A stretch of 64,000 nt of DNA, from positions 1-64,000 of the IMG/VR virus record IMGVR_UViG_3300049048_000052; one strand, 5' to 3'. The notes under the pieces were generated by a model. The model saw only the letters and a list, made by a program, of their open reading frames with translations, was not told the DNA's origin and did not search any database. A program made the position numbers and the translations under genes. The stretch's first letter is position 1, and the number at the start of each line of letters is the position of its first letter. Shown here one piece after another: positions 7,200-57,751 of the stretch.

Positions 7200-7781
7200 T
7201 TAAAACTCCATGATAAGTATGGACTCGATAGTCTCTTCTTTATTGGTGTAATCAATACCGTATTCCTGGGCCAGGTCTTTTATCTTCCTCACAGAAAGAG
7301 CGGATAGTTCCTTGGCTCTCTTGGCTATAGCCTCAATCTTCTCATCAGCTACCTCTTCAAGCTTAACTTCCTCTACAGGCTCATCTGCAGGTAGTGCACG
7401 CTCAAGATCAGTAGCCTCGATCTTATCAGGTATGGATATCTCAACCCTATCAACAAAGGTATTGATAGGAGGATCCTGTGGAGGGACAATAAAGCTGTCC
7501 TCAGGCAGAGAAGTAGGATGTTCAATAACTTCTTCATATTGCTCCCCTACCGGAGTAAAACCATTCTCATCACTTACTTCTTTAAGCAAGGCGAGGCCTA
7601 CTTGGTCCTCATCTATGTAGATGAAATCTCGGTAGGGGAATAAGTTAGATAGTAAGTATTTGAGCTCCTCTCTTTCCTCAGACTTATTAATGTCTAGGTA
7701 GTAATCCTCATGGGCTGTAAGCCATATGTCCTTACTTCTAAACTGAAGTCTGAAAGGTGTTCCAACTTGTATTCTAATCAT
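7200..7781 (-). CDS. Virion-module protein with C-terminal HeH/Rho-N-like motif
   Basis: ELSALSVRKIKDLAQEYGIDYTNKEETIESIL after an acidic linker. Confidence 0.5.
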   Translation of the reverse strand: MIRIQVGTPFRLQFRSKDIWLTAHEDYYLDINKSEEREELKYLLSNLFPYRDFIYIDEDQVGLALLKEVSDENGFTPVGEQYEEVIEHPTSLPEDSFIVPPQDPPINTFVDRVEISIPDKIEATDLERALPADEPVEEVKLEEVADEKIEAIAKRAKELSALSVRKIKDLAQEYGIDYTNKEETIESILIMEF

Positions 7782-7818
7782 AATTCCCCTTGTTTGTGCT
7801 AAAGGTTAGTATAACCTA

Positions 7819-22600: not shown

Positions 22601-25600
22601 TCGAGCAGCTTAGGAAGGAGTACGGACAATATACTGAGGAACTACAAGTCCTCATAAGAGATAAGACAGTATCAGCTGATAGACATGAGGTCAAGGTCAT
22701 AATGACTAAGCTGGCTACTGTACAGGGTCAACTTTTAGAGCTGGCTAGATATTACCAACTGTTTGAGGATAAACCTGCCTCGGTTGGTATATCTAATGCA
22801 GTAGTAGGGGCCATGAATAATCCTAGATTTGGATTCTTTGTGCCCTACATGGAACCTATCATGTCTGAACATGGCGTCATCCTTAAGGTAGATAAGACTA
22901 GAGGTTTCTATAGCTTTATGCCATCTGGAGATGACATAAGACTAATGGGGGCCCAGTTTGGTAATTATATAGACCGTATAGTTCAAGCAACTATAGTGCT
23001 GCAATCAGGCTTTGCTCCTGGAGGACCCCTAGATGATATGTTTACTCGCATGTCTAAGATTAGGGGAAGTACCCATATAGCTATGAGTAATGAAGAATGG
23101 CAGCATCTGGATAGATTCTATAAGACAGCCCTTGAGATGCCTGCCCTATTAGCTGATGCTGCCTCAGGTACTAGGTTACAAAGAGCAACTGGTGCTGCCA
23201 TACCCTTTAGAGGTGGAGTGAGTACCCCTGCGGCCTCTGGTTTAGTACCTCCTGAAATGGTGGTGCTTGCTAGTGAGACATTAGCTAAACATGGCCTTAG
23301 AGTATCTGAGACTAAATGGAGAATGTTAGAGGATACTGATGCAGAGATGTCCAGAACTCATAGCACTCTCCAGAGTCTTGCTTATGAGTCTATGTCTCAG
23401 GCCGATAAGAACATAATAGAGAATAAGAGAAAGTTCCTAACAGGTCAGAGATTCGCATTAACTGAGGGTTTATCTGAACAGGGTACCAAGGGTCTACTAG
23501 ATAGGGCCCTAAAGGAAAGCCGTGAGCTAGCAGAAGACTATAGCAATGCGATGACCTTTACTGACCTGAAAGAAAGACAGAGACATCTAGGTAAGGTCTT
23601 TGGTAGGGCCGATCGTATGGCTAGACGTTTCAGCACTACTGTCTATGATCTGAATAAGAGAGGGGACTCCTTCGCTCAGCTGGCCGCCATCAGTGAGATG
23701 GAAATATGGAAGTCGCAGGCTAGAATATCTAGTCTAGAGGCACAGAACCAGGTAACTCCATTATCAAGTAAGGCTGCTGAAATACTAGATGCTGAAAGGA
23801 ATCAGCTCCGTATGTTTAAGGAGCTACCCTTCTATGTAACCAACTTTACCTTGGGTAGTGCTAACTCTGCCAGGAAAACTATGGAGGTTAGCCACCTAGC
23901 ACTTGAGGGTAAGCTAAGAGGTAATATTGTTAGAAGCATAATGTCTGCTGATATTACTAAGGAGATATTCGAGCTGGATGCAGATCACAGGACAGACTTC
24001 CTTGATTATAAGTTAACTACTCTAATAGATCATCTGGAGACTGCTAATGCTAAGAGGGATAATCCTGGTCCTCATGTGAAAGAAAGTGTTAGAGCTATGA
24101 GGAGTAGCCGTCTAGGAGGTGAGGCGGATTATAATAATCGTTTAGCTAGTAGGCTCGTAGATATTAGGGATAGGGTTAGAAGGGGTGGTACTAAGACGGC
24201 TGATGTCCTGGCTGAGATCAATGCTGCTTATGCTATGTATGACGTAAGTGGCGTATCATCTGCTATAGGCTTCCGTTCTCCTCCCTTTGGTTCTACTGAG
24301 CCCCAATTACAGATACTAGATGTCCTAAGGGATATAGCGGTAGTGAATGAGTATGCCCAAGGTATTGATGGGGGTAGTGGTAGATTAATCCAATACAGTG
24401 GGGCTGATGAGAGAAATGCATCATTGACCCTACTAAGTCCTATATCTATCCTAACTATGAACTTGGGTGACTTTGATGGTGACCCTTATACATTCATATT
24501 CTCTGAGCTACAAGGGTTAGAGCATAAGGTGATGGAGAAGAAGGATAATATTAAGATGCTCCAGTTTAGAAGGTCTAAGTGGAGTAAGGAACTATCACGC
24601 TTAGAACCAGATACCTTGGATTACGAAGATCTGAAGACTAGGGTTGATAATACTGAGAAACAGATCCTAAAGAATGAGGAGGAGATACCAAGGATCAGAT
24701 TAAAGATTAAGGAGATGGATGAACATCTACAAAGAGATATTATAGATAAGGGTGTGGCCCATAAACAGGTCGCGGCCTATATGGGTATCAATGCTAAATA
24801 CTTATTAACTGAGAGTCAGGGTGGTTATCTGGCTGACTCTGATAAATTAGATGCTAATGTCTTGTTCACCTTTATTGAACAGGGTAGAGGTTTGTATCCT
24901 GGTATAGATGATAAATATAAGAGTATCGATACACTCTACAAAGCCTTAGATCGACTCATAGAACCTACCTCCATGAGTGGGCCTATGAACCTTAATATGC
25001 ACCTATCTAGTATAGAAGCCCTAAAGAGTAGGGCCGCTGAGCTAGCTCAGGATATGAGTGATAACAGTGGTGGGGTATACGAACGTATTATCAATAACAA
25101 TGAGGTAGCTAGCGCGGTATTTGCGGAGTTACAGAACTTTGTTAATACTTATGAGGATTCAACCTCAGTTGAGATTGAGGACTACAAGTCAGGCTTAGCA
25201 GATCAGACTGTCAGCATGTACTATAAGATGCTTGGCACTAATGAGTTCCAGAAGATGATGAAGAGGGCTGGGGGAACTCAGATGGAGCTCTCCACGTATG
25301 ACATGCTAACAAAGGTCTTGGGTAAGGCGGGTGGTGATATCCTTGGTAAGACCTATAACTCTATAGTAGGTACTCTATTCGCTGATAGTCCTATGTTGGC
25401 AGTGGGTCATGTACTGACTAGGAGTGATGAGGTTAGCTCTGGGGTTGAGCAATATATAGATAATCTTATAAATACAGGTAAGTTAAGCGGAGATGAATGG
25501 TCTACCGGGGCCGACTTTATAGAGAATATAAAGACTAGTATGTCTAATGCAGAGCAGCTACAGGGATTCATGAAAGATATCCAGCAGCTACTCAGAGATA

Positions 25601-27786
25601 GTATTAAGTTAAAGGGTGGTACTAATATTCTTAGTGCTTTGAGAGATAAGGCTCAACAATATGAGGATCCCAACCTAGACGATGCAGGTAGAACAAGGGT
25701 TCTAAATGACATTGTTAAGGATATAGGTCCAGGACCTGGTCTCAAGTCATTAATGAGGCTTGATAGCTTTGTTAATAATATTAATGGTAGTATCTCTGAC
25801 TTTGAGTTAGCAGATGAGTTTGGAGTGTCCAAACTCGGGGATGAGTACGCATATATAACAGGAACTCTACAGGCAGCTGATCTTATTAATGAATCAGACC
25901 CCACTAAGGCTTATAGGACTAATAAAATGGTAGCCGCCTATAAGACTGTTAGAGATATCCAGCATATGGTTACTGCTTTTAACTTCGAGAGAGGTAGCAG
26001 TAGCAAGCAGTTCATGGATAACTTTATAAGGGTAGAGGAGAGAAGGGGCCAAAAGGATGTAATACTAGATAAGTTTAGAAATAGGAGTAATGCTGAGTTT
26101 GGTGAGTATAGTAGAGCATTAGCATCTTACAACGATGATGATCTTACTCCTAAGCCTAATGATAGCTATGATGATAGATTAACTGCTTTTGAGCAGAAGT
26201 ATGGAGAGTCTGGGCTGCTATTGTTCGCACATATGTATGAACAAAGCAAGGCTGGAACTAGAGGAGTCTTTGGAGAGTTCGGTCAGAACTTACTAGCCTT
26301 TGCACATAAGGATAGTATCAGGAAGACTCTAACTAATGTTATGGAAGGAAGATCAGAGACTATAGCAATGCCTGCCACTATGGATCAGGATATATTCACC
26401 TCTGATATAACCTTAACCCTAATGAACCTGGCCTCTACTAATAAGCTGGATCCTTCAGCCGCAGCCTTATTCTATCAGAGTATGGAAGGTCTCCTTAAGG
26501 TAGGGGGTATAGCATCAGATCCTAAAGATGTGTTGATGAATATCCTATCCTCTACCACTAGGAACAATAATGGTAATGAGGCTGCTACTAAAATAAGTGC
26601 TCAGATAGGGGCTCTTAATATGTTAGAACAAGAGGGCAGTGAGTTTAGACTTACCTTTAGTCAAGGTGGGCAGGAACATACTGCTATCTATAGCAGCCTC
26701 TTGGATTATCTACAGCAGTCCCTTACTGAAACAAGGGCAGGTCTAGAGAGTAAGATGATCCAAAGCTTCGTGAAGACTATTATTAATGATGGAGTATCTA
26801 GTGGTAGAAAGCCTAAGAATGCTAGAGAGTTCGCTACCTATATTCTTAAACCTAAGGGTTCGGATTCAGATACTGAGCCTGATGAGGCTATGATTACTAA
26901 GATAGTTGAGAATATAGAATCTATGTCCGAAGTAGATTCTATATTTAAGGAGAATGTTAGTACTAAACCTGTTCTAGAAGGCAAATATGCTGAGGTAGCC
27001 CGTAAGAGTATTAGTCGTATGGCTAGTGAGGATAAAGCCAATACTATGGACCTAATACTACCGGCATTCTTAAGTATTATGGGTCAAGCCATTGCTAGTG
27101 GATCTGTTGAACCTGAGGCTTTTCAAGATGTTGTTGGTTCTACGTTAGTGGCCGCAGCATACAGTAGACCTAACTTTGGTTCTAGGACTGCTACTGGTTT
27201 TATGGCTAATGTAGGTATAGGAAGTGCATTCAAATTCAGGATGGCAATTAATGAGGCGGGTGGGGATCCTGGTGAAGGCATAACCAGACTTATAGCTAGA
27301 GAACTAACCTTTAACGCAATAAGCGCTTGGGCTGCACCTAAGCTCACTAACCTAATGACTCAAAAGCTATTCGGAGCTAGACCTCAAACCCTAGATAGGG
27401 ATTACCATGAGGGTAGTAGGAACGTAGCAGGTATGATGAGTGGTGCAGTACTATCAGCCGCACTAGGAGTACTAGGAGGTAACGTAGCCTCTGGTGTTGT
27501 AGGAATGATGAGCACTGTACCTACTGCTAATCTAGTGGATACTGCGCTTGATTATATAGCAGTTAAAGCCAGAGCTATAGGAGCTCAAACGTTCCTAGAG
27601 GAATCTGATGCTATTAATATATTTAATGAGGAAGATGGAGAGTCTGTAGATGCAATATACTCAGATGAACCTATATCTTTCTATGGATCTAATCCTCAAT
27701 CCTTAGCAGAGGCTGTATATACGGATAACACTATGGATACTATTGTGGTGGAGCCCGTCAATTTGTTTGAGGATTATGATTCTTAG
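16633..27786 (+). CDS. Giant 3717-aa protein: tandem PLD domains plus two-barrel RNA polymerase centre (candidate virion RNAP)
   Basis: H339xK341xxxxD346..GSIN and H654xK656..GSSN PLD motifs; FRSPP about 65 aa before MNLGDFDGDP (D2613-D2617, nt 24469-24483); TTG start with GAGGGG SD. Confidence 0.75.
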   Translation: MFSEEEEKRSSLELLMGRLRGEESSDDALSLAVRHHIYYGGGSDSFMARYNRMADENPSDEPRLFGDLSTLSGEFELDENSLNQSIREVTAYSAFSSFDKDMQNVLGNGANALKRLHGRFYFGSKTQDATFASKNVYDTIYRPFSIDADKEGWTIAPESPLHGMREHVLQTIVDADVNSGRGNFVNIRSELNRMVRGNLSINKKNLALIDKNTDERIAGMIGQKTYVNRPGIAPFLSMIQGADTEIVIDTYQFQNKAISDYLYNWVTRKALAGETPRLTIRLAMPRDKGVDSATSYDILGPNLIQILKFKQLKEQLNNDFPDRDWDDLIKVEVESDVHHSKMYFTDRAAAIGSINLTSPVGYNPNQAGSNYEMMRIFHSVAPQASMGDLRSALTDLKIRHTLGLNKEQLREEFLYRQVKDLREQMENRVRGSSMNFTNRRGQLGMGGDIFEHLEKTVEMLDDPRFIGSRLGDIIAGGTKSDKSRARFANRSGRLELHMILDQVMLLQHADGLFNTMVEGEFGRFSDDQLSRMDSTGARRARYKRVQSKVLRALADNRAFIVADARNLREGVIDPLMFGAYDERTGTNRGPLIAREVWEQHDYDIAKLARKATGSSVDERVLSLSNQFGFSNETSLQVLALASGNIRAAGVPRQHVKAYSLMARLDDRKGAPNLVALSSYMGSSNLGLYSSPMRGIDDLGSSMDSDHLSHEIGLTMMMGQVRSMMDFNTTSEYALSSSQEYVEMQRYFLPNWSLAMSQLGVSAIENKNFMEVRSRSLWEGNVDSKSLVGLRDGIHNMMRSMKIDESVYSIGTVTDGSSQKVIGLELSLDARALAGFGKGFEGLHGESRRISYRFTTLKGAGADPMVYAIDQGKIIGRSLFVNNSDVELPILDRTIQSKSSTVLNSIDNTLAFIATLAAEVTHRALIDKPRKTFESLDGKAQRVAIGDYLARLAGIRGGQLEGLYNTDVLTDEHALKLAEEINKRLLYGNESMKRAAALAGIDYSQQARAKDVNTLVASIQSLAKEAEAIAVHRKLDKSGYRRAQLIGSGGTSIIDQMMSMITEKGYADLLLDVVSHTNGMDYYSSMSADIEKVKKMLMEPFLTFGQHNIYGSSQSYFRLGVRGVSNAPQYRDAISMAREGNPMAAYALPSLALTYGPTTNLRANGLIRSIADKSSINFGVGEGLSFFNTPTQVVGDVTSAEILSFLSVGSLVRREEIENYIKSVDPKANTQALLSKAFGDSQEMFSFTFDTVKKVAQVPQRLKNAVGARPLYDISENAQRVLEDPMSGEAATLGRDYVWKLREELKLHFRRQINIDLVTDEVTRAALEREMENKIDALVQPDMDIGAYFGGQIRRILSQPLAELVKRERDEIEQLLGTEVNTSTIGSELLRVRMLRADMYGSSYRGVIGGSRRHGAPVALVQLTGGYSDYFYANPMFGGSQGMRQGLLERAEKRVKASMLSTDWQEKTGVLIQPGYTIRLDKKTGTASVFDERGNWVRAIDSRDQMDAIEKVVENTDINGLPSFANVQATSSNRLGEDSVELILRFEQQSPASVDKYQMNFEATYVRSIKPGGGRRVEGNWAGALVKGVAVFTRHDNEYSFFGGILDQLNQMPTTTFGGQLDIRNVFGLLSPANLKSFVYGHGAELLTDNRKRTGLLNAYNDAAVTSGSAEAERVSKRLAAAILLGFGTSMIESSAEANAIKQNLYRAAAQGELGEYFQGVAAATGLLEFKDERGQVMDAASVFTSEASFKVAQTPLLAAITSEDIMQAINGSGGRLFDKLSTAITNAAKEAEGTGYMVAGDFRHQQAGILLTALDIFDQLSVQVDRKRGRNLVTLPTDFNVKNASVRAQLAAIVGMGLNDMEDETKVENILGSMLSKAPVLRLFMDLSFSHSKEPVSTKMTGKLEMQHLIKPLQMLAGEFADNKSLDKMRVTIANMFAAISHGSLYQYVAAGDLPSKNTIVDITDPFVRTPMFKQRMLGIYGTGLHTDKFEQLRKEYGQYTEELQVLIRDKTVSADRHEVKVIMTKLATVQGQLLELARYYQLFEDKPASVGISNAVVGAMNNPRFGFFVPYMEPIMSEHGVILKVDKTRGFYSFMPSGDDIRLMGAQFGNYIDRIVQATIVLQSGFAPGGPLDDMFTRMSKIRGSTHIAMSNEEWQHLDRFYKTALEMPALLADAASGTRLQRATGAAIPFRGGVSTPAASGLVPPEMVVLASETLAKHGLRVSETKWRMLEDTDAEMSRTHSTLQSLAYESMSQADKNIIENKRKFLTGQRFALTEGLSEQGTKGLLDRALKESRELAEDYSNAMTFTDLKERQRHLGKVFGRADRMARRFSTTVYDLNKRGDSFAQLAAISEMEIWKSQARISSLEAQNQVTPLSSKAAEILDAERNQLRMFKELPFYVTNFTLGSANSARKTMEVSHLALEGKLRGNIVRSIMSADITKEIFELDADHRTDFLDYKLTTLIDHLETANAKRDNPGPHVKESVRAMRSSRLGGEADYNNRLASRLVDIRDRVRRGGTKTADVLAEINAAYAMYDVSGVSSAIGFRSPPFGSTEPQLQILDVLRDIAVVNEYAQGIDGGSGRLIQYSGADERNASLTLLSPISILTMNLGDFDGDPYTFIFSELQGLEHKVMEKKDNIKMLQFRRSKWSKELSRLEPDTLDYEDLKTRVDNTEKQILKNEEEIPRIRLKIKEMDEHLQRDIIDKGVAHKQVAAYMGINAKYLLTESQGGYLADSDKLDANVLFTFIEQGRGLYPGIDDKYKSIDTLYKALDRLIEPTSMSGPMNLNMHLSSIEALKSRAAELAQDMSDNSGGVYERIINNNEVASAVFAELQNFVNTYEDSTSVEIEDYKSGLADQTVSMYYKMLGTNEFQKMMKRAGGTQMELSTYDMLTKVLGKAGGDILGKTYNSIVGTLFADSPMLAVGHVLTRSDEVSSGVEQYIDNLINTGKLSGDEWSTGADFIENIKTSMSNAEQLQGFMKDIQQLLRDSIKLKGGTNILSALRDKAQQYEDPNLDDAGRTRVLNDIVKDIGPGPGLKSLMRLDSFVNNINGSISDFELADEFGVSKLGDEYAYITGTLQAADLINESDPTKAYRTNKMVAAYKTVRDIQHMVTAFNFERGSSSKQFMDNFIRVEERRGQKDVILDKFRNRSNAEFGEYSRALASYNDDDLTPKPNDSYDDRLTAFEQKYGESGLLLFAHMYEQSKAGTRGVFGEFGQNLLAFAHKDSIRKTLTNVMEGRSETIAMPATMDQDIFTSDITLTLMNLASTNKLDPSAAALFYQSMEGLLKVGGIASDPKDVLMNILSSTTRNNNGNEAATKISAQIGALNMLEQEGSEFRLTFSQGGQEHTAIYSSLLDYLQQSLTETRAGLESKMIQSFVKTIINDGVSSGRKPKNAREFATYILKPKGSDSDTEPDEAMITKIVENIESMSEVDSIFKENVSTKPVLEGKYAEVARKSISRMASEDKANTMDLILPAFLSIMGQAIASGSVEPEAFQDVVGSTLVAAAYSRPNFGSRTATGFMANVGIGSAFKFRMAINEAGGDPGEGITRLIARELTFNAISAWAAPKLTNLMTQKLFGARPQTLDRDYHEGSRNVAGMMSGAVLSAALGVLGGNVASGVVGMMSTVPTANLVDTALDYIAVKARAIGAQTFLEESDAINIFNEEDGESVDAIYSDEPISFYGSNPQSLAEAVYTDNTMDTIVVEPVNLFEDYDS

Positions 27787-30826: not shown

Positions 30827-31241
30827 AAGATTAAGTGTCTTATATAAAAGGTTTATACTTATTAGATAATATGGATAGAGGGGTATATGTTGGGCCCTTC
30901 TAGCTTCATATTACTGTAAAAATTATATGGTATTTTTATAGATCGTTATTGAGAGGTTTTCTCTATTGGTATAGCCAATAGGGATATAAGGTTTAGCTCT
31001 TGTTTATCTAGGGTAAGTCTTATGTATACCTGAGCTTCTAAAAAGGGGAATTTTTGTTAGGATTCTCTTAGGTATTATGTGGGGGTAGGTACTCCCCCCT
31101 GGGGGGTCGGCCTGATTCATTTATTAGGATAGAGGAATTCGATGGATTCCTTGTATATCCTGATTAATGATTGGGTCAGCATATGAGTAATGGGTCCTCA
31201 CGGGCCCTTTACTTGTAGTGTAACCCTAGGAGGGTACGAAC

Positions 31242-31661
31242 ATGAAGCGTTACCAAGTGACACAAGCACAACTACTCAACCAAGTCTCCCAAGACCTGGC
31301 TGACTGGTGTTGGCTTGAGCCTGGTGCCGACTACCACCAAGGTGAGATCGTCTGGCTGCCAGACACTCACCCTCTGGTAGGTACTGTGGGTAGCTGTCTC
31401 ACTGAAGTTGCTGACCGGGAGCCTGTCTCCTGTGACAGCTTCAGTGACAAGGTGTTCTACTTCGGCATGACCGGAGTAGCACTGGCAGTGGCTGTGCTTG
31501 GTGGTGTAGTTGTACTACACGGCTTGCTCTCCTCTGTACCTACTAACGTAGGGCAGAGCCTGGGCAAGCGTAGCCACTTCTACGCCTCCTTCGTTGACGG
31601 TCAACCAGCCTGTGAGCTGCTTGATCTCAACGGGGATAATATCCCTGACATCTGCGACTAG
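31242..31661 (+). CDS. Membrane protein with C-terminal DxDGD-type calcium-binding loop
   Basis: Hydrophobic GVALAVAVLGGVVVLHGLL segment; DLNGDNIPDICD terminus. Confidence 0.55.
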   Translation: MKRYQVTQAQLLNQVSQDLADWCWLEPGADYHQGEIVWLPDTHPLVGTVGSCLTEVADREPVSCDSFSDKVFYFGMTGVALAVAVLGGVVVLHGLLSSVPTNVGQSLGKRSHFYASFVDGQPACELLDLNGDNIPDICD

Positions 31662-31721
31662 TAGGTGTCATAAGAAAAGGCCTATATGGCCCTTTTCTTA
31701 TGTTTATAGAGGAATACTCTC

Positions 31722-31877
31722 ATGGCTACTCACATCCGTTTCTGCCTGTACGCATTGGTGATTGTGTATAGTACACCTGTGGCTCTGGTCCGTGTGTACT
31801 ATACACACACCTGCTTGGTACAGGTCCAAGTACAAGAATACATCTGCCAAGAGGTAGATGAAGATATGCCTTATTAA
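31722..31877 (+). CDS. Small hydrophobic protein, 51 aa
   Basis: MATHIRFCLYALVIVYSTPVALVRV... with GAGGA SD, between two modules. Confidence 0.55.
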   Translation: MATHIRFCLYALVIVYSTPVALVRVYYTHTCLVQVQVQEYICQEVDEDMPY

Positions 31878-31946
31878 CCCCTCCTAGGACAAAGGGCTCT
31901 CCACAGGGCCCTTTTCTTGTACCTTTTGTCCTAGGAGGGCAAGAAT

Positions 31947-32162
31947 ATGTTTAAGTTTCCTGGTAAGTCTGATAAGTCTTCTCAGTTCAAAGAGGACATG
32001 GTCAAGGTGACCATGGCTGCCGAATTGGCCAACTTAGAGGGGCAGGCAGGGGAGGATTACCTCTTGTTCTGTACTCCAGAGCCTGAGGTTACCTCCGCTG
32101 ATCACCTGCTTGATGCAGGTGCTCCGCCTGCTAAACCTACCGGGTGGAATCCCATAGTCTAG
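31947..32162 (+). CDS. Hypothetical early protein
   Basis: AGGAGG SD, module-flanked. Confidence 0.65.
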   Translation: MFKFPGKSDKSSQFKEDMVKVTMAAELANLEGQAGEDYLLFCTPEPEVTSADHLLDAGAPPAKPTGWNPIV

Positions 32163-32225
32163 GTTAAGTAACAAAAGGGTCAGCAATGGCCCTTTTGTTA
32201 TCTTTAGTCCTAGGAGGACATCACA

Positions 32226-32504
32226 ATGGGTTACATTATCTCTTTGTTCCTTGGTGCTCTGTTGGGTGGTGGGTCTGCTGCTAGCGTTCTCATCATCCGT
32301 CATCGTGCTTCTATGGAACGTATGGGTCTTATGGTAGCGGATACCCGTGCTCAGCTCCGCGCTGAGATCAAATACCGGGGTCTCCTGGTAGAAGAGTCTC
32401 GACACTATAAGCAGTTGGAATACCTTGTGGATAAGCATCTAAATGATGCTGACTCCACTAAGGAGGACCTACATGATGCTTATCGTGAGCGTCTGGGTCT
32501 CTAA
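32226..32504 (+). CDS. N-terminally anchored coiled-coil protein
   Basis: MGYIISLFLGALLGGG.. hydrophobic start, similar to the start of 33057. Confidence 0.65.
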   Translation: MGYIISLFLGALLGGGSAASVLIIRHRASMERMGLMVADTRAQLRAEIKYRGLLVEESRHYKQLEYLVDKHLNDADSTKEDLHDAYRERLGL

Positions 32505-32654
32505 TTAAACTAAAAGGGCCTTCATTGGCCCTTTCTTTATCTTAAATAGCAACAATAAGGGGCTTGTTCCCTTTGAGCTATTCCCTAGGAACATTAACAC
32601 AAAGATAGGCCTAATGGCCTTTTTCTTAGTTGTTAGTCCTAGGAGGACACAGTT

Positions 32655-32993
32655 ATGCCTACGACCTACCTGACCGTAGCTCGCCTTTGCTCTTGGTATC
32701 ATCTCGCCTACCTCCTTGAGGAGCGGGAACAGATCAAGAGTGAGATTGATACAATCAATGGACTCTATAAGAGTCTACATTGTGTTAATGCCCGTAAGGC
32801 GGGTAAGCGATATCAGAGGGAAGTACACCATACTCTGCGCATTGTGGATCGTAAGATCCGCCGTGAGTTAGAAGAATTGGAGTGCTTCTTACTCCACGGT
32901 CGGCTACCAGCACCGCCACCAAAAGGTGTGAATGTGCTGGGTGCTATGAGATTATATATGGATCAGTGTGTAAGCACCTCCGTTAATCCATAG
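32655..32993 (+). CDS. Hypothetical early protein
   Basis: SD, module-flanked. Confidence 0.65.
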   Translation: MPTTYLTVARLCSWYHLAYLLEEREQIKSEIDTINGLYKSLHCVNARKAGKRYQREVHHTLRIVDRKIRRELEELECFLLHGRLPAPPPKGVNVLGAMRLYMDQCVSTSVNP

Positions 32994-33056
32994 TAGATAA
33001 CAAGAGAGGGCCTTCATCGGCCCTTTTCTTGTTCTATAGCCTAGGAGGCTAAGTAT

Positions 33057-33440
33057 ATGATCGGCTACATCATCTCCGCTCTATTGTCCGCTGGCACGGT
33101 GTTAGGGGTAACCCTAACAGTAATCCAGGCTAAGGATGATAAGATTGAGCAGCTACAAAGCATGCTCAATCATGAGGTAAAGATGAAAACCCTAGCTGAC
33201 CAGTTTGCTGAGGTTTGTCTCGATGGTCGAGATCAGGCCCAGCAATGCTCTGATAAGTACTGGGAAGATCTTCAGAGAGCTAACACTCTCCTGAAGAAGT
33301 ACCAGGAGCTTAACGGTGCTAATGGTCGGTTAGAGTCAGCCCTAAGAGAGCGTATTGCTCTCTTGGAGGAACAGCTAGAAACACTAAAGAGTATTCATGA
33401 ATTGGATACTCTCCATGTGAGAAGGCTGGACCTGAACTAA
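33057..33440 (+). CDS. N-terminally anchored coiled-coil protein
   Basis: MIGYIISALLSAG.. TM segment then heptads. Confidence 0.65.
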   Translation: MIGYIISALLSAGTVLGVTLTVIQAKDDKIEQLQSMLNHEVKMKTLADQFAEVCLDGRDQAQQCSDKYWEDLQRANTLLKKYQELNGANGRLESALRERIALLEEQLETLKSIHELDTLHVRRLDLN

Positions 33441-33541
33441 CACAATAAAAGGATTGTTGAGGTGGATCGCTACAGGCTATTCCACTCTCTACAGGAATAG
33501 GACCTCAATGGTCCTTTTATTGTTCTATTGGAGATACTCCT

Positions 33542-33733
33542 ATGTCTATTATTCACCATCCGCCGACTAACACTTTCTTTCTACATGCAAATGGACAGCT
33601 AACTCCACTAACATATCAGGATCTAATCCTGCTCTGTGTTATGTATGGGGTTAGTTGGATTCGGTTGCTCTCTATATATAAGTTGGCAGATGGATTAACT
33701 AATACTAGGTTGCGGTCCAAATACGGACTGTAA
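33542..33733 (+). CDS. Hypothetical early protein
   Basis: GGAG SD, module-flanked. Confidence 0.55.
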   Translation: MSIIHHPPTNTFFLHANGQLTPLTYQDLILLCVMYGVSWIRLLSIYKLADGLTNTRLRSKYGL

Positions 33734-33786
33734 TCTAGATGAGGGCCTAAGGGCCCTCTTATTAGTTGTTAGTCCTAGGAGGACCT

Positions 33787-34086
33787 ATGCAATATAAGAT
33801 CGCCAACATCGACCTGTTCCGCTCCATGACCTCTTGGATGTGCCTGCAGCATCCTTGGGATGGTGGTGAACTGGTGGAGCTGACTGGAGACGAGTTTGAT
33901 CTACTGGTCTACTCTCTAGATCTCACATGGGGTCTAAAAGAGGAGGATGATACCTTCGCTATCTTCCTGGAGGAGATAGATGAGATGATTGCATCTCAAG
34001 AGAAGTATCGCTCTTGTCCTAAGATGCGTGACCATATCCCAGAGCCTATCGACTGGGATGACCTGGATAGCTTGTTAGACTTCTAG
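33787..34086 (+). CDS. Acidic hypothetical early protein
   Basis: ATG after AGGAGG; ends DWDDLDSLLDF. Confidence 0.65.
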   Translation: MQYKIANIDLFRSMTSWMCLQHPWDGGELVELTGDEFDLLVYSLDLTWGLKEEDDTFAIFLEEIDEMIASQEKYRSCPKMRDHIPEPIDWDDLDSLLDF

Positions 34087-34147
34087 GTAGACTAATAATA
34101 GGGCTAGCAATGGCCCTATTATTAGTTGTTAACCCTAGGAGGGTAGT

Positions 34148-34321
34148 ATGGATTACGTTATGATCTGTGATGCTAACGGCATGGTAGATTCTATCCCGGA
34201 TGATGAGACACTTGATAAGACAGTTGATGCCTTGATCAACCCTCTCGAATGGGGTGAGGAGTCTGCCATTAACCGCAACACCATTGCGGCATACCCTCTA
34301 GTTATCAATACTGCTAACTAG
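34148..34321 (+). CDS. Small acidic protein, 57 aa (MDYVMICDANG...)
   Basis: Below the ORF-track cut-off; AGGAGG SD, module-flanked. Confidence 0.6.
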   Translation: MDYVMICDANGMVDSIPDDETLDKTVDALINPLEWGEESAINRNTIAAYPLVINTAN

Positions 34322-34382
34322 GATAAGACATAAGGAGGGCTTTGGCCCTTTTTATGTTCTATTGTCCTAGGAGGACTTCGAT

Positions 34383-34829
34383 ATGTCTACCAAACTCGCT
34401 AAGCTTTACAATGTACAAGCCAAGCTGATGGAGGAACTCAATGAGCTGCAAGGCTTCTTGGGTTGCTTCCATAGCGTGGCTATGCTGCGTAGGCTAGATG
34501 AGCGTGAGGATCTTCTTATAAGTCTGCTCAGGTTAGTCGAGGATAATATCCAGACTGAACTGAACATATTAGATAATATAGATAACCTTGCGGGTATCGG
34601 TGGCAAGGGCGGTAGGATCCACTTCTACGTTAAAGCAGAGGTGGATACTAACGTTGGTGAGATTGAGTATGATGGAGGATTCTTCGGAGACCTCTCTCAG
34701 GATCGTACTCAGTGGTCCCGCTCTAAGCAGGCTAGGCTTCATGGAGGACACAAGTGCCTCAAGAAGTGGAAGCGCTCAGGGCGCTATGCTCGCCGTATGA
34801 CTAACCGTATTGACAAGTACGCCTGTTAG
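34383..34829 (+). CDS. Hypothetical early protein
   Basis: SD, module-flanked. Confidence 0.65.
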   Translation: MSTKLAKLYNVQAKLMEELNELQGFLGCFHSVAMLRRLDEREDLLISLLRLVEDNIQTELNILDNIDNLAGIGGKGGRIHFYVKAEVDTNVGEIEYDGGFFGDLSQDRTQWSRSKQARLHGGHKCLKKWKRSGRYARRMTNRIDKYAC

Positions 34830-34943
34830 TCAACACTAATAAAAGGGTTGTAGTGATCACCACTACAGACTAAGTCCAATTCACCTCAGGACTAGGGCCA
34901 ACTATGGCCCTTTTATTAGTTTACAGTCTAGGAGAGTACTAGT

Positions 34944-37471: not shown

Positions 37472-37551
37472 GATGTGGTTAAGAGGGCCCAGTCGGGCCC
37501 TTTTCTTATCCTAGGTAATAATCTATCTGTCCTAGGTTAGGAGATACACTC

Positions 37552-38001
37552 ATGTCCGTATACTATATCATCAACCAAGACAACTCTATCGTTCTGTCTG
37601 TAGGCGACGATGCTCGTTGCGGTGCAATCTACGACCAACAACAAGCAGAAGAGATTGCTGAAGGTTGCTATGATTGGGAAGTTATCTCTTTCCCTGCCTC
37701 ACCTATTCAGGTAACAGAACGGAAGTGGAAGGTTAATATTGTCCTACAGTTTGTAGGCGGTACTGACCGCAAAGAGTTCTTTGTGATGGGTACTTCTGCT
37801 CTAACTGTAGCCGAGCAGTTCAAAACTATTATCTTGAGCCGCTACCATGATTACATCTGGGCTGAGCAAGCACGTACTGCTAAGCCCTACCTTATTGGGG
37901 ATACACATGCACATTTCGAATTGGATTCCAATCGTAAGACCATTACAGTCAATGAGTATAGGGAGCCAGAGTTTAAGTCTGTGCGTGATATCAACTTCTA
38001 G
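37552..38001 (+). CDS. Hypothetical early protein
   Basis: GGAGATACACT leader. Confidence 0.65.
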   Translation: MSVYYIINQDNSIVLSVGDDARCGAIYDQQQAEEIAEGCYDWEVISFPASPIQVTERKWKVNIVLQFVGGTDRKEFFVMGTSALTVAEQFKTIILSRYHDYIWAEQARTAKPYLIGDTHAHFELDSNRKTITVNEYREPEFKSVRDINF

Positions 38002-38083
38002 ATTTGAATGAGTAGATGAGGGCCAGATATCTGGCCCTTTTCTTGTCCTAACACTTACTTTACCTAGGACAAGGAGATACACT

Positions 38084-39277
38084 ATGTCTATTTGTCAGTC
38101 TTGCGTATTCTACTTCAATCAAGACAACCATGGAGTGAAAACAATGTTATGTTCAGGTGGTTTGACTCTAGGAGTAGACAGTTGCTCTGGCTACGATGAG
38201 GGGGAGCCTAATATTCAGGACTCTTACCTTAACAAAGAAGTGATGGCTACTCTCGTGAACCCTGAGCCATCTATCCCAATAAGAGTAGTATCGATATCTG
38301 AGTCTCAAGCTTATGAGCGCCTGCTCTTTAGTTATAATGAGAATGGTTATGAGTGGACACCTATAGATGTCTACAATAACCGCATCGTCATTATTACCAA
38401 CTGTGGTGCCTATGCATGGTACTACCGTAGAGGGGTGGATAATGTATGGACCTTCCAGAGTTATGATGGAGGGGACACATTTGATGCCGTAGGTGATACA
38501 CCTCTACTAGCCTATCTCAGATATGACGGCTTCTGGGACTTTGAGCATGTCAGCTTAGAAAGAGAAACCAATGCCATTGCTATCAGCAGTGAGTTTGCTA
38601 TTGTAGGGTCTCCAGTAGGTTATTTCATTGGGCACCTAGTATTACAAGAGAACCTTACGACCCGTATCTGGGGTCTCATGCCTAAGTGCTTCAGGACTGA
38701 AGATGATGCGTATCGATATCTCCTGGATGACGCGAACAATATTACTGTCAGCAAGATCGAACTGGGCAACTCCTGTGACTCAGACCTGGGTCACTGGGTT
38801 AGAGATCTCCAGTCAATGGAAGATATGGATGATGTAACCATATATCCTATGGGTGATCTATTGGTCGTAGCCAAATGCTTTGCGCCTGATATGGACTGGC
38901 ATGTCATGACTAAGGCCTTTCAGATCGTGTGGAGTATCTCTAACTTCTTCGAGGAGGGATACTACCTCAGCCTGGAGGAGGTAGTGACCATGTACAAACA
39001 AGAGTCCCTACTTATACCTTGTCCATCTGTAGATTGTCCAGAGTATATGAAGGAGTTAGGGACTCTGTTCCCTAACCTTGAGTTTACATTCGAGGATGTA
39101 ACTGGGGATGGTCAGATCTATGCTACTTACAGCACAGATGAGACTATATTCTCTATTACTTCTCATGAACCAGGGATGTACTATGCCAGATTACATACTC
39201 CTGACGGTAATGAGGATCTTGAGAGTGATAGTCTGACAACTATTGCTGAGCACTACCTTGCTTACTTTCTGAGTTAG
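38084..39277 (+). CDS. Acidic hypothetical protein with N-terminal Cys cluster
   Basis: MSICQSCVFY..C..C; GGAGATACACT leader. Confidence 0.65.
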   Translation: MSICQSCVFYFNQDNHGVKTMLCSGGLTLGVDSCSGYDEGEPNIQDSYLNKEVMATLVNPEPSIPIRVVSISESQAYERLLFSYNENGYEWTPIDVYNNRIVIITNCGAYAWYYRRGVDNVWTFQSYDGGDTFDAVGDTPLLAYLRYDGFWDFEHVSLERETNAIAISSEFAIVGSPVGYFIGHLVLQENLTTRIWGLMPKCFRTEDDAYRYLLDDANNITVSKIELGNSCDSDLGHWVRDLQSMEDMDDVTIYPMGDLLVVAKCFAPDMDWHVMTKAFQIVWSISNFFEEGYYLSLEEVVTMYKQESLLIPCPSVDCPEYMKELGTLFPNLEFTFEDVTGDGQIYATYSTDETIFSITSHEPGMYYARLHTPDGNEDLESDSLTTIAEHYLAYFLS

Positions 39278-39570
39278 CAAGGTGTCCTTAGTTAATCCCT
39301 GAGAACACAGGGCTAATGCCAACAGGGGGCCTTCGGGCCCTCTTATTATGTAATGAATATATACTTGCCCTTCTATTGAGTCATGGGGCTAATGGGGAGA
39401 TACATTCTCCCCTTCTTATTCTTATCTAAGTTATATATCTGTCCTTTGACTAGGGACATTATAGGGAGCACAACTCCCTTCCTTATTTTAATTGTTGTAT
39501 CTCCGTACGGCTCATAGGGCCCTTTTATTATCCTAGGCACTATTTCTAATCCTAGGTTAGGAGATACACT

Positions 39571-40122
39571 ATGTCTAACTGCATCAACTGTGTTCATTTC
39601 ATTGAGCGGGCTACTTCAACTGGTAATGTCTTAAGGATGTGTAGGGTTAATGCCACCTTACATGATATTAACTGCACTAAAAAGGTTACAGGACCAGTGA
39701 AACCCATAAAGGGCCCAAGTCAGAAAGCGCTAGCAGCTACTGTATTGGAGTCTCTTCTGGGTTGGAAGGGAAGTAGCCTAGCTGCCAATCCTGCATCTAC
39801 GGACTCTAAAGTTAAAAGTAGTAGTGAGGCTAGAGTCCTGGCTAAGAAGCAGTACTATGCTAGTAAGGCTATGACTTTTAATACCTTTGATAGTCTAGGC
39901 ACCTTTACCAAACTTCTAAAACCTATCTTCCGAAGTCTAGGTGGTGATTGGCAATGTGGCTGCAGCAAGGATGGTACTGGCTACTACGCTAGGGCTGGTA
40001 ATATAATCATCTCCTATACTATAGCTAGTTATCAACCATGGCTCTACCTAGTGGAGGGGAGCGGTATCGCTGAGTCTTTTGAGACTTTTATACAACTCAA
40101 GCAGCGTGTATTGGGTTACTAG
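39571..40122 (+). CDS. Hypothetical protein with N-terminal Cys cluster
   Basis: MSNCINCVHF..C..C, same pattern as 38084. Confidence 0.65.
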   Translation: MSNCINCVHFIERATSTGNVLRMCRVNATLHDINCTKKVTGPVKPIKGPSQKALAATVLESLLGWKGSSLAANPASTDSKVKSSSEARVLAKKQYYASKAMTFNTFDSLGTFTKLLKPIFRSLGGDWQCGCSKDGTGYYARAGNIIISYTIASYQPWLYLVEGSGIAESFETFIQLKQRVLGY

Positions 40123-40246
40123 TCCCTAAGTTGTAAGTGGGGCCCGAGAAGGCCCCACTTACAACTACTGTATCTCCTGGCCCATTGGCCCTTTTATTAT
40201 CCTAGGTAACACTTTACCTATCCTAGGTTAATGGAGATACACTATC

Positions 40247-41743: not shown

Positions 41744-41818
41744 TACCTATATACAAAATAGGACAATAAGGGGGCCATCGGCCCTTTTATTGTACACTCC
41801 CTTTATTGGAGAACCACT

Positions 41819-49262: not shown

Positions 49263-49317
49263 AGATAATGGGGACCCTATGGTCCCCTATTCCATCTTCG
49301 TTAACCTAGGAGGGTTT

Positions 49318-50462: not shown

Positions 50463-50548
50463 GCAACCACGGTCCAAACGGTAGGGACACTTAGGGAGGT
50501 ACTATGTACTGACTCTAGGAGATCTGGGTTCGATTCCCAGTGGTTGCA
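50463..50548 (+). tRNA. tRNA-like gene with 20-nt expanded anticodon loop
   Basis: GCAACCA/TGGTTGC acceptor, GTCC/GGAC D stem, CTGGG-TTCGATT-CCCAG T arm; anticodon not assignable. Confidence 0.7.
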
Positions 50549-50569
50549 TTATTAAACCTAGGAGGGTTT

Positions 50570-50857: not shown

Positions 50858-50929
50858 ACAGGATTAGTTCAGTGTTAGCAGAACATCCCCTCTAAAGGGA
50901 CAAGATAGGTTCAATTCCTATGTTCTGTT
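50858..50929 (+). tRNA. tRNA with CUA (amber) anticodon, atypical
   Basis: TCCC-CTCTAAA-GGGA anticodon arm (4 bp), ATAGG-TTCAATT-CCTAT T arm; D loop lacks GG. Confidence 0.65.
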
Positions 50930-53432: not shown

Positions 53433-53980
53433 TAGACTGATAGGGAGGAACGGGCCTTGAGCCAACGTATTCCTATTAGTTGAGGGTGGTAAGGACCCTA
53501 CGATGGTTCTTATTGCTCAAGCCTAGGTCGTAGTGACGTACTTCCTAGCTAGGCCCAGTAAAGTTTGCTAGGTTTGATAAATGGGTCGAAGTACAAACCT
53601 AACTGCAGGGATATGCCGCCCTGTTAGTCTTTGACGGGGGAAACCCGCATTGAGTAGTACAACCAAGTAGGGAGCACCACCCCCTAGGAGGAATAGGCAA
53701 GGTATACGTCTGCTCATATCTATTGTGGTGATAGGTATGGGCGCATGGTCCCTACGTTAAGGGGTACCACTCTCTTGATGAAGAGACGTTTCCTAGTTCG
53801 TAAACTAGGTGGTGGAGTGCCTTCCGTGGGGACGCTGTTCTCATTGGCTAGTGCCCCTCAGGTCTACTATGGGAAACCATAGGGTAGCTATAACCTTGAC
53901 GATACTCGAAAGAGTTGGGGCAGGGCTATGGACTTATTAGCTACAAGTACAGAGGGGAAGGGGTCATAGCCTTCCCCTAT
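53433..53980 (+). ncRNA. Candidate large structured ncRNA (about 550 nt) downstream of tRNA
   Basis: ORF-free, GC-richer; about a dozen hairpins including GAAA-capped stems and a terminal AGGGGAAGG/CCTTCCCCT stem. Confidence 0.65.
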
Positions 53981-57661: not shown

Positions 57662-57751
57662 ATTGACCCAAACGTACCCTCCTAGGACTAAAGGCCAGGG
57701 TCCCTTCGGGGACCTAATATTTATCTGTGGTTTAATTGATTAAGGGAGTTA

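What the first reader, a model, noticed from the sequence alone, without database searches (positions are those of the whole stretch)
31223..34375. Covarying mini-hairpin NNCCT-AGG-AGGNN built into the Shine-Dalgarno sequence
Seen: ACCCT-AGG-AGGGT (31223, 34132), GTCCT-AGG-AGGAC (32207, 32637, 33772, 34364), TAGCCT-AGG-AGGCTA (33037) and TTGTCCT-AGG-AGGGCAA (31926), with variants at 49304 and 50555. The outer pairs change together, so the structure is under selection. A 5-7 bp stem with a 3-nt loop is the geometry of N4 vRNAP DNA-hairpin promoters; as RNA it presents AGGA in a loop over the RBS.
Basis: partly seen in the sequence, partly recalled or inferred. Interest (0 to 1): 0.75.

Follow-up and report, generated by a model that had tools for sequence, protein, structure and literature searches.

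The report
Covarying mini-hairpin around phage Shine-Dalgarno
A 13-base hairpin that folds the ribosome-binding site of about a dozen small phage genes back on itself is real, is kept by compensatory changes, and recurs in several seemingly unrelated phages; it most likely tunes translation as RNA and is not an N4-style promoter.

Summary
CCTAGGAGG occurs 13 times in the window against 1.4 expected. Ten copies lie 4-8 nt upstream of an ATG, and the two bases on each side covary to give a 5-bp stem with an AGG triloop (NN-CCU/AGG/AGG-N'N'). The window is the start of a 252-kb soil jumbo myophage distantly related to Ma-LMM01-type cyanophages. Eight copies sit in a run of small ORFan genes, each unit being GC hairpin + U-tract + spacer + SD hairpin + ATG. 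The same element occurs in strand-biased arrays in at least three other complete large phages and several smaller contigs that share no capsid or array genes with this one. Pooled over 43 units, flank pairs 1 and 2 are paired in 38 of 43 (18-22 expected) and pairs 3-5 are at chance. In one lineage sigma70-type promoters lie a variable distance upstream, while the distance to the start codon is fixed. The N4 reading fails: no vRNAP homologue was found, the template-strand loop would be CCT, and the predicted start site would delete the SD. Best explanation: a cis-acting RNA module that gates a consensus SD at about -5 kcal/mol. Function is untested; the closest analogue is the unexplained start-associated sequences of Cluster K mycobacteriophages.

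The parts
31223..31235 (+). SD mini-hairpin ACCCU-AGG-AGGGU, 8 nt before the ATG at 31242
31926..31942 (+). SD mini-hairpin extended to 7 bp (UUGUCCU-AGG-AGGGCAA, one G.U), before the ATG at 31947; it can also pair with 31879-31893
32207..32219 (+). SD mini-hairpin GUCCU-AGG-AGGAC, before the ATG at 32226
32636..32648 (+). SD mini-hairpin GUCCU-AGG-AGGAC, before the ATG at 32655
33037..33051 (+). SD mini-hairpin with 6-bp stem UAGCCU-AGG-AGGCUA, before the ATG at 33057
33772..33784 (+). SD mini-hairpin GUCCU-AGG-AGGAC, 4 nt before the ATG at 33787
34132..34144 (+). SD mini-hairpin ACCCU-AGG-AGGGU, before the ATG at 34148
34364..34376 (+). SD mini-hairpin GUCCU-AGG-AGGAC, before the ATG at 34383
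34925..34937 (+). Variant AGUCU-AGG-AGAGU: the inner pair C-G is replaced by U-A (compensated) and one flank is mismatched; before the ATG at 34944
49303..49315 (+). Variant AACCUAGGAGGGU, 4 nt before the ATG at 49318; the first flank pair is A/G
50554..50569 (+). Variant AAACCUAGGAGGGUUU (predicted 6-bp stem, 4-nt loop UAGG), 4 nt before the ATG at 50570
31192..34911 (+). Array of about 12 small ORFan genes. Each is preceded by a GC-rich hairpin plus U-tract (31192-31207, 31677-31694, 31894-31911, 32177-32192, 32607-32620, 33007-33024, 33499-33515, 33741-33758, 34097-34120, 34336-34349, 34894-34911), then 12-20 nt of T-rich spacer
   Evidence: terminator-like sites 31 against 7.7 expected in 28-40 kb
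33530..33540 (+). Alternative SD hairpin GGAG-AUA-CUCC (the SD is in the 5' arm), before the ATG at 33542
37502..37551 (+). Family-2 leader: the U-tract plus CCUAGG pairs with CCUAGG plus the SD (predicted -14.4 kcal/mol, z -3.4), before the ATG at 37552
38039..38083 (+). Family-2 leader: UUUCUUGUCCUA pairs with UAGGACAAGGAG (-13.7 kcal/mol, z -4.8), before the ATG at 38084
39523..39570 (+). Family-2 leader with two CCUAGG copies 21 nt apart, then UUAGGAGAUACACU and ATG
40192..40246 (+). Family-2 leader with two CCUAGG copies 21 nt apart, then the SD and ATG
41797..41811 (+). CUCC-N7-GGAG hairpin that sequesters the SD of the 1613-aa ORF (ATG at 41819)

Best explanation
The element is a 13-nt RNA mini-hairpin in the 5' UTR, built around a consensus Shine-Dalgarno sequence. 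An internal anti-SD (NN-CCU) pairs with the 3' half of AGGAGG plus two following bases. The 5' AGG forms the triloop. It is a portable, cis-acting translation-initiation module attached to small accessory genes that are probably early. It fixes the local structure at the ribosome-binding site at about -5 kcal/mol, which raises the cost of opening the SD by roughly 2 kcal/mol. It leaves AGG exposed as a possible nucleation site for the 16S tail. The result would be a moderate, uniform gate on a very strong SD, whatever leader or coding sequence surrounds it. Shown: presence, enrichment, position, strand bias, a 5-bp stem kept by compensatory changes, and recurrence in phages that share no capsid or array genes. 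Inferred: that it acts as RNA, that it acts in cis without a partner, and that its effect is on the initiation rate. Confidence that it is a selected hairpin acting as RNA at the ribosome-binding site is about 0.85. Confidence in the specific cis-acting gate mechanism is about 0.5. The overall figure given is a compromise.
For: Enrichment and position: 13 against 1.44 expected. Across four genomes, 43 of 50 copies lie upstream of a start codon, with spacing 4-8 nt (mode 5) and 39 ATG + 4 GTG starts. Covariation: for the window. Pooled over 43 units, flank pair 1 has 37 Watson-Crick + 1 G.U (18.2 expected), pair 2 has 37 + 1 (22.0 expected), and pairs 3-5 are at chance; 14 distinct flank types give permutation p = 5e-5. 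Different contigs are dominated by different but still complementary flanks: GU/AC, GA/UC, AC/GU. It is not a promoter: in G009 there are 17 sigma70-type promoters against 4.1 expected, with the -10 ending a variable 21-50 nt upstream, whereas the distance to the start codon is fixed. Other ways of pairing the SD occur in the same gene block (33530, 41797, family 2) and in relative G003 (z -3 to -6), so RNA-level SD pairing is a theme. Energetics: hairpin MFE is -5.45 +/- 1.1, with 37 of 43 between -7 and -5. Opening the SD costs 5.35 kcal/mol natively against 3.46 with the 5' arm removed, dearer in 38 of 42 units, p = 1.4e-10. The loop AGG is about 85% unpaired. No phage trans-factor is shared: no G000 gene has a homologue in both G006 and G007/G009. 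Negative controls: 0 copies in five relatives of G000 and 0-1 in five cultured phiKZ-like jumbo phages.
Against: There are no transcript data (no RNA run was listed), so the 5' ends, and hence the presence of the 5' arm in the mRNA of this phage, are not shown. The two accessibility measures point in opposite directions: mean per-base accessibility is higher with the hairpin (0.50 against 0.35; 0.49 against 0.34 for shuffled leaders), while whole-SD opening is dearer. 'Gate' against 'presentation' is therefore unresolved. Copies within one genome are related by duplication, so independent compensatory events are far fewer than units. In the pooled flanks G.U (2) equals A.C (2), so wobble pairs do not identify the strand. 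The wider sense-strand bias (p = 0.012) may reflect composition. A database-wide contrast of paired against unpaired 14-mers was inconclusive (61 against 55 and 23). A -5 kcal/mol hairpin on a 6-nt SD may have little effect on expression.
Confidence: 0.55

Rival explanations
1. The hairpin is the recognition site of a trans-acting RNA-binding factor that controls the whole gene class. Candidates are a host CsrA/RsmA-type repressor (it binds GGA presented by a short hairpin over the SD and can stabilise a weak SD:anti-SD hairpin) or a RegB-like endoribonuclease that cuts GGAG in early SDs to shut them off.
For: GG of GGA lies in the loop and the A is in the weak closing pair. CsrA sites are GGA in hairpin loops with 4 or fewer contiguous base pairs, and RsmA stabilises an SD:anti-SD hairpin in psl (PMC7652899). 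[quoted passage not shown] The element marks one gene class: small genes with their own promoters, one of them anti-restriction-like. Its sporadic distribution among relatives would fit dependence on a host factor.
Against: No RegB (PF10715) or CsrA (PF02599) homologue was found in any of the four phages (the RegB search had no positive control). No protein is shared by all three lineages. The usual ANGGAN hexaloop is not met, and pairing of the GGA lowers CsrA/RsmE affinity. Flank identity varies freely, which favours structure over sequence read-out. The hosts are unknown.
Confidence: 0.22
2. The pairing has no function of its own. CCTAGGAGG with its flanks is a strong ribosome-binding site copied with its cassette by duplication or recombination (like PeSL-type mobile regulatory cassettes), and the complementary flanks are inherited.
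For: Units fall into sub-families with near-identical spacers (TTAGTTGTTAGT x3; GTTCTATTG x3). Two array proteins are paralogues. Each contig is dominated by one flank type. G009 cassettes resemble PeSLs (PMC4122927).
Against: Inheritance does not explain why at least 8 different flank types stay complementary while positions 3-5 next to them are at chance. It does not explain the inner-pair compensation UCU/AGA at 34925. It also does not explain the same architecture in front of unrelated genes in phages of 39-65% GC.
Confidence: 0.1
3. It acts as double-stranded DNA: an operator for a dimeric DNA-binding protein (inverted repeat NNCCT-N3-AGGNN, or the CCTAGG palindrome), or a site tied to restriction-modification.
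For: CCTAGG is a palindrome. 15 of 16 copies between 30 and 41 kb are intergenic, and in family-2 leaders two copies lie 21 bp apart, which is two helical turns.
Against: One protein would require constant half-sites, yet here the half-sites vary and stay complementary. At 38039 the first site is CCTAAC (palindrome broken) while pairing extends outward. CCTAGG is not enriched overall: 102 against 100 expected. The flanks follow the hairpin register, not the CCTAGG-centred palindrome register.
Confidence: 0.05
4. It is an RNA thermometer of the fourU/ROSE or hsp17 kind: the SD is released when the hairpin melts.
For: The SD is paired with a pyrimidine stretch. Family-2 and G003 leaders pair the U-tract with the SD through G.U pairs.
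Against: The isolated mini-hairpin stays folded in prediction: -3.1 kcal/mol at 45 C and -0.6 at 65 C. It has no internal mismatch or loop of the kind that makes known thermometers melt near 37-42 C (from my own knowledge).
Confidence: 0.04
5. It is an N4-type promoter: a DNA hairpin extruded from supercoiled DNA and recognised by a virion RNA polymerase.
For: 5-bp stem, 3-nt loop, central G on the + strand; a 3717-aa ORF lies nearby.
Against: See the interpretation check: no vRNAP homology; no T7-type RNAP domain found (no positive control); the template-strand loop is CCT; the predicted +1 falls from 2 nt before to 2 nt after the A of the ATG; the motif lies 4-8 nt from every start codon in 43 units; sigma70 promoters lie upstream in G009/G007. 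N4 has three such promoters per genome, whereas here there are 9-14 per genome.
Confidence: 0.02

Closest known systems
Start-associated sequences (SAS) of Cluster K mycobacteriophages (Pope et al. 2011, PMC3203893)
   Same: A 13-nt motif 3-7 nt upstream of start codons. It contains AGGAG flanked by symmetric outer bases (GGG...CCC), has one orientation, 11-19 copies per genome, is confined to non-structural genes, mostly precedes ATG starts, and lies in front of unrelated gene families. Its function is unknown and was still untested in 2025 (PMC12699233).
   Different: The sequence differs (GGGATAGGAGCCC) and so does the host group. SAS outer bases are fixed, so no covariation is available. 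Here the flanks vary and compensate, the stem is 5 bp with a 3-nt loop, and the element occurs in several phage lineages that share no capsid or array genes.
SD:anti-SD occlusion hairpins in bacterial and phage leaders (for example the psl leader stabilised by RsmA, PMC7652899; T4 lysozyme early transcripts, from my own knowledge)
   Same: An upstream pyrimidine stretch pairs with the SD, and stability is near the range where translation starts to be affected.
   Different: Those are single-gene devices, often with a partner protein or an alternative transcript. This one is a minimal repeated module on 9-14 genes per genome, with half of the SD left in the loop.
PeSL composite terminator/promoter cassettes of T4-type phages (PMC2839356, PMC4122927)
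   Same: Repeated intergenic cassettes (stem-loop, then SD, then start codon) flank small variable ORFs in plastic regions. G009 cassettes have the stem-loop overlapping a sigma70 promoter.
   Different: In this window only 17-25 nt separate the stem-loop from the SD, and no sigma70-type promoter is present (17 found against 25 expected). PeSLs are not described as having a covarying SD hairpin.
N4 vRNAP early promoters (PMC4496689)
   Same: A short stem with a 3-nt loop.
   Different: Strand, loop sequence, distance to the start site, copy number and polymerase all differ (see the membership test).
CsrA/RsmA binding sites and T4 RegB cleavage sites
   Same: GGA/GGAG at the SD in a partly constrained hairpin context, marking a set of mRNAs.
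   Different: No such protein is encoded by these phages. The loop is 3 nt rather than about 6, and the A of GGA is paired.

Membership tests
N4-type vRNAP hairpin promoter | A virion RNA polymerase of the N4 gp50 type is encoded | tested here: not met
   BLASTP of the 3717-aa ORF against gp50: best E 0.07, outside the polymerase core. Mini-vRNAP against G000, G006, G007 and G009: nothing (no positive control). PF00940: none (no positive control).
N4-type vRNAP hairpin promoter | The hairpin lies in the template strand, with a 3-nt loop carrying central -11G, -10G and -12A, and conserved -8G/-9C | tested here: not met
   The genes are on the + strand, so the template-strand loop reads 5'-CCT-3'. 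On the other strand the loop is AGG, not GGA. Features taken from PMC4496689.
N4-type vRNAP hairpin promoter | Transcription starts 11 nt downstream of the loop centre, and the leader and SD follow | tested here: not met
   The loop centre lies 9-13 nt from the A of the start codon (spacing data), so the SD would be left out of the transcript. No 5'-end data are available.
N4-type vRNAP hairpin promoter | Three promoters per genome (N4) | tested here: not met
   9-14 copies per genome, one per gene, in arrays in the middle of the genome.
Start-associated sequence (SAS) | A conserved 13-mer containing the SD core, 3-8 nt upstream of start codons, in one orientation, in many copies, on non-structural genes | tested here: met
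Start-associated sequence (SAS) | Consensus GGGATAGGAGCCC in Cluster K mycobacteriophages | tested here: not met
   The core here is CCTAGGAGG. The phage is a 252-kb myovirus with a Ma-LMM01-like capsid protein.
PeSL cassette | Stem-loop, then a sigma70-type promoter (-35/-10), then the SD and start codon | tested here: not met
   Window: promoter-like sites 17 against 25.3 expected, and only 17-25 nt from stem to SD. The feature is met in G009: 17 against 4.1 expected, with the stem-loop over the promoter.
CsrA/RsmA binding site | Unpaired GGA in the loop (typically ANGGAN) of a short hairpin, often over the SD | tested here: inconclusive
   GG is in the triloop, the A is in the closing U-A pair, and the stem is 5 bp. 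No phage csrA was found (positive controls worked). The host is unknown and no binding was tested.
RegB-type SD cleavage site | GGAG in an early-gene SD with a 3' RAYARAA context, and a regB gene | tested here: inconclusive
   GGAGGAC(AAAA) fits in many units. PF10715 was not found, but that search had no positive control.
RNA thermometer | The SD hairpin melts within the physiological temperature range | tested here: not met
   Predicted -3.1 kcal/mol at 45 C and still negative at 65 C. This is prediction only.
Rfam families | A match to any curated RNA family | tested here: not met
   No match better than E = 0.15 and none near its gathering score.

The most novel reading that the evidence does not exclude
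The mini-hairpin is a shared class tag on early or accessory mRNAs. A host-encoded (or still unrecognised phage-encoded) factor reads it to switch the whole class on or off together. The tag has spread horizontally, or arisen convergently, among large phages that share no capsid or array genes and that meet in the same hosts. Under this reading it would be a SAS-like system with a defined RNA structure and a testable partner.
Probability: 0.2. Interest if true: 0.75.

Novelty: new variant of a known kind. Interest (0 to 1): 0.55.

Why it matters
Hairpins that occlude the SD are textbook devices, but they are usually one-off. Here a minimal 13-nt version is reused on 9-14 genes per genome, is kept by compensatory change, and appears in front of unrelated genes in phages of 39-65% GC that share no capsid or array genes. 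That makes it a candidate general building block of phage early-gene expression. It is also a structurally defined counterpart to the still unexplained SAS motifs. It is small enough to test directly with stem-breaking and compensatory reporters, and it could serve as a compact part that fixes the structure at a ribosome-binding site. It also corrects a tempting misreading: stem-plus-triloop geometry alone does not make an N4-type promoter.

Tried and rejected
1. N4 promoter reading: rejected.

2. Transcript mapping: only one DNA run (soil metagenome) was listed and no RNA run.

3. Close relatives for orthologous comparison: megablast against cultured phages found nothing. The capsid-based relatives (48-64% identity over the eight loci; the five searched were 56-64%) carry no CCTAGGAGG. 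The Microcoleus phage My-WqHQDG lacks the design.

4. First SD-accessibility control: it was flawed because shuffling released the terminator arms. It was redone.

5. 'SD occlusion is stronger in this gene block than elsewhere': weak (P_unpaired 0.35 against 0.48, p = 0.04), and not below the shuffled expectation for the mini-hairpins.

6. G.U against A.C as a strand test: the sense strand is favoured overall (p = 0.012), but this is confounded by composition, and the pooled flanks give 2 against 2.

7. Shared trans-factor: none found by tblastn, nor RegB or CsrA.

8. 'GU/AC is a universal optimum': withdrawn. It came from seeding the scan with that type; other seeds found arrays dominated by GA/UC or AC/GU.

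9. 'Stability window' (one G-C flank pair in 32 of 34 units): with only 6 distinct types it is not significant.

10. Database-wide contrast of paired against unpaired 14-mers: inconclusive, and one control is itself an extended SD.

11. Literature search for the motif string: only cloning primers.

12. Rfam: nothing.


Full report
**Context.**
The window is the first 64 kb of a 251,780-bp IMG/VR virus record with 42.6% GC. It is a myovirus: it has a tail sheath, a Mu-like portal and an E-type capsid protein. The capsid protein is 46-48% identical to those of Microcystis phage Ma-LMM01 and Microcoleus phage My-WqHQDG. The only public run listed as holding this DNA is a soil metagenome, and no RNA run was listed. 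The host is unknown. About 70% of the crude gene calls have an SD-like motif of at least 4 nt, so the host probably uses SD-led initiation.

**Observation.**
CCTAGGAGG occurs 13 times in the window against 1.44 expected; no shuffle reached 13. In the whole genome there are 15 copies, 13 of them on the + strand. Eleven copies lie just upstream of a start codon, ten of them in the window. Eight lie between 31.2 and 34.4 kb in a run of about 12 small + strand genes that match no PHROG family at E < 0.001.

Each unit reads, in order:
- a GC-rich hairpin,
- a U-tract,
- a T-rich spacer of 12-20 nt,
- NN-CCTAGGAGG-N'N',
- 4-8 nt, then ATG.

Terminator-like sites are four times enriched in this region (31 against 7.7 expected), while sigma70-like promoters are not (17 against 25). 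The first unit's GC hairpin (31192-31207) lies between the AT-rich divergent region (30827-31190) and the first gene. The hairpin therefore belongs to the cassette rather than to an upstream gene.

**Covariation in the window.**
On 11 aligned units the stem is 5 bp:
- Pair 9-21 is always paired (A-U six times, G-C five times).
- Pair 10-20 shows U-A, C-G, G-C and U.G.
- The inner pair changes once, from C-G to U-A (34925).
- The covariation score is 0.314, against 0.178 for shuffles (0 of 500 reach it) and at most 0.177 for slid registers.

**The element is not peculiar to this phage.**
A scan of IMG/VR with one 15-mer version found three further complete large phages with strand-biased arrays, all with zero hits for the reversed control pattern:

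| Genome | Size | Copies |
|---|---|---|
| G009 | 168.6 kb | 14, all + strand, within 11 kb |
| G007 | 174.1 kb | 8 within 7 kb |
| G006 | 243.4 kb | 10 on the - strand |

How these phages relate to each other:
- G007 and G009 are related to each other: their arrays are syntenic at about 50% amino-acid identity.
- G006 is phiKZ-like by its helicase.
- The G000 capsid protein finds nothing in G006, G007 or G009.
- The G000 array proteins have no homologues in the other arrays.
- G000 shares only 9-12 genes with G007/G009 and one gene with G006, at 21-45% identity over the aligned segments.

Scans seeded with other flank types found further arrays: L267 (39% GC, five copies), L275, L208 (65% GC) and L105. 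The cassettes of L105 look like those of this window. As negative controls, five relatives of G000 have no copy and five cultured phiKZ-like jumbo phages have 0-1.

**Pooled test (43 gene-associated units, four genomes).**

| Flank pair | Paired (of 43) | Watson-Crick expected if independent |
|---|---|---|
| 1 | 38 (37 Watson-Crick + 1 G.U) | 18.2 |
| 2 | 38 (37 Watson-Crick + 1 G.U) | 22.0 |
| 3-5 | 8-12 (6-10 Watson-Crick) | 7.3-12.0 |

There are 14 distinct flank types, and permutation on the distinct types gives p = 5e-5. Arrays in different contigs are dominated by different flank types that still pair: GU/AC, GA/UC and AC/GU. A single DNA-binding protein would require constant half-sites, so the constraint is nucleic-acid pairing. 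The spacing from AGGAGG to the start codon is 4-8 nt with a mode of 5, and 39 of 43 starts are ATG.

**It is not a promoter.**
- In G009 there are 17 sigma70-type promoters against 4.1 expected, 16 of them on the gene strand. Their -10 elements end 21-50 nt upstream of the motif, and several are embedded in 17-bp stem-loops, as in PeSLs.
- The element therefore sits inside the leader at a variable distance from the start site and at a fixed distance from the start codon. This also argues against a role as a 5'-terminal protective hairpin in that lineage.
- One G009 array gene matches an anti-restriction family, which fits early genes.
- The N4 reading fails on every defining feature that I could test (see the membership test).

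**RNA-level pairing of the SD is a theme in this gene block.**
- Other units pair the SD in other ways: GGAG-AUA-CUCC at 33530, and CUCC-N7-GGAG at 41797.
- A second leader family at 37.5-40.3 kb pairs the terminator U-tract and a CCUAGG with a second CCUAGG and the SD. Two of these fold at about -14 kcal/mol, with z -3.4 and -4.8.
- In relative G003 (32% GC), nine units pair the U-tract and an anti-SD with AAAGGAGAAA, with z -3 to -6. The SD is almost fully occluded there: 0.05 against 0.26 for shuffled leaders.
- Sense strands fold better than antisense strands in 20 of 28 units (p = 0.012). Composition may contribute to this.

**What the mini-hairpin does to the SD (prediction only).**
- Its stability is uniform: -5.45 +/- 1.1 kcal/mol.
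- Measured per base, the SD is more open with the hairpin than without the 5' arm (0.50 against 0.35), because the loop AGG is about 85% unpaired. It is also more open than in shuffled leaders (0.49 against 0.34).
- Measured as the free energy needed to open all six SD bases, the hairpin makes opening dearer: 5.35 against 3.46 kcal/mol, in 38 of 42 units.
- I therefore read it as a modest, uniform gate with an exposed nucleation site. These tools cannot decide between 'gate' and 'presentation'.
- It is predicted to stay folded up to 65 C, so a thermometer role is unlikely.

**Trans-acting factors.**
No G000 gene has a homologue in both G006 and G007/G009. No RegB or CsrA family member was found in any of the four phages. 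A host factor remains possible. A GGA presented by a short hairpin over the SD is the classic CsrA/RsmA site, and RsmA is known to stabilise a weak SD:anti-SD hairpin. RegB prefers an unpaired GGA with a constrained fourth G.

**Comparison with the known.**
- The nearest described thing is the start-associated sequence of Cluster K mycobacteriophages. It has the same size, the same position, similar copy number and the same restriction to non-structural genes, and its function is unknown.
- This element differs in sequence and in phage group. It also has variable, compensating flanks that define a structure.
- No paper in the searched library describes it, and no Rfam family matches.

**Verdict.**
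The function remains to be tested. I rate it a new variant of a known kind, of moderate interest.

Noticed in passing
window 31879-31893 and 31925-31939: A perfect 15-bp long-range inverted repeat encloses the terminator hairpin 31894-31911 and buries the whole SD of the gene at 31947. The region 31865-31960 folds at -37.9 kcal/mol. The 5' arm begins 2 nt after the stop codon (31875-31877) of the 51-aa ORF, so a terminating ribosome could open it. This makes it a candidate for translational coupling.
   Followed up: partly
window 37502-40246: A second family of leaders: terminator, TTTTnTTAT, CCTAGG, 13-15 nt, CCTAGG, then TTAGGAGATACACT and ATG. The two CCTAGG copies are 21 nt apart. The tail GGAGATAC is also found at 33530.
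   Followed up: partly
window 50465-50549: A tRNA-like stretch with a perfect acceptor stem (GCAACCA...TGGTTGC) and a T-arm (GGTTCGATTCC), but a long insert. Neither ARAGORN nor Rfam calls it. It ends 6 nt before the SD hairpin at 50555.
   Followed up: partly
window 50858-50929: A tRNA with a CUA anticodon (ARAGORN labels it tRNA-Pyl; Rfam tRNA score 37 bits). This is a possible amber suppressor, which raises the question of TAG read-through in some genes. Two further ARAGORN calls (50941, 51519) have odd anticodon loops.
   Followed up: no
whole genome G000: Several GC-rich 6-bp palindromes are almost absent: CCCGGG 0 (9.5 expected), GCCGGC 0 (6.7), CTCGAG 1 (8.3), CCGCGG 1 (4.2). CCTAGG is not avoided (102 against 100). 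This looks like restriction-site avoidance.
   Followed up: no
window 16633-27786: A 3717-aa ORF matches only the unannotated phrog_31006. It has no Pfam or PDB sequence match and no similarity to N4 vRNAP. The related Microcoleus phage also encodes giant proteins (a 12.5-kb CDS).
   Followed up: partly
L058 (G009 97500-111000), e.g. 7323-7361 and 7756-7793: 17-bp stem-loops whose loop carries the -35 hexamer of a sigma70-type promoter, with the -10 just 3' of the stem. These are composite terminator/promoter units of the PeSL kind. One leader (about L058 5170-5210) contains (CCAA) repeated eight times.
   Followed up: partly
window 32226-32504 and 33057-33440: Two array proteins share an N-terminus (M(I)GYIIS..., a predicted membrane helix, then a coiled-coil-like tail). 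They are paralogues within the array, which is evidence of cassette duplication.
   Followed up: no
L105 (IMGVR_UViG_3300045999_013478): A 17-kb contig with three cassettes very like those of the window (GGGGCC hairpin, T-run, TAGTGATCT spacer, then AAC or AAT, CCTAGGAGG and ATG; only the first has both flanks paired), in front of 44-47-aa ORFs. It may be a closer relative of the array than any capsid-based hit.
   Followed up: no
window 57678-57686 (- strand) and 53683-53691: Two copies of CCTAGGAGG are not followed by a usable start codon. The first has a terminator-like hairpin upstream on its strand and may be a decayed cassette.
   Followed up: no
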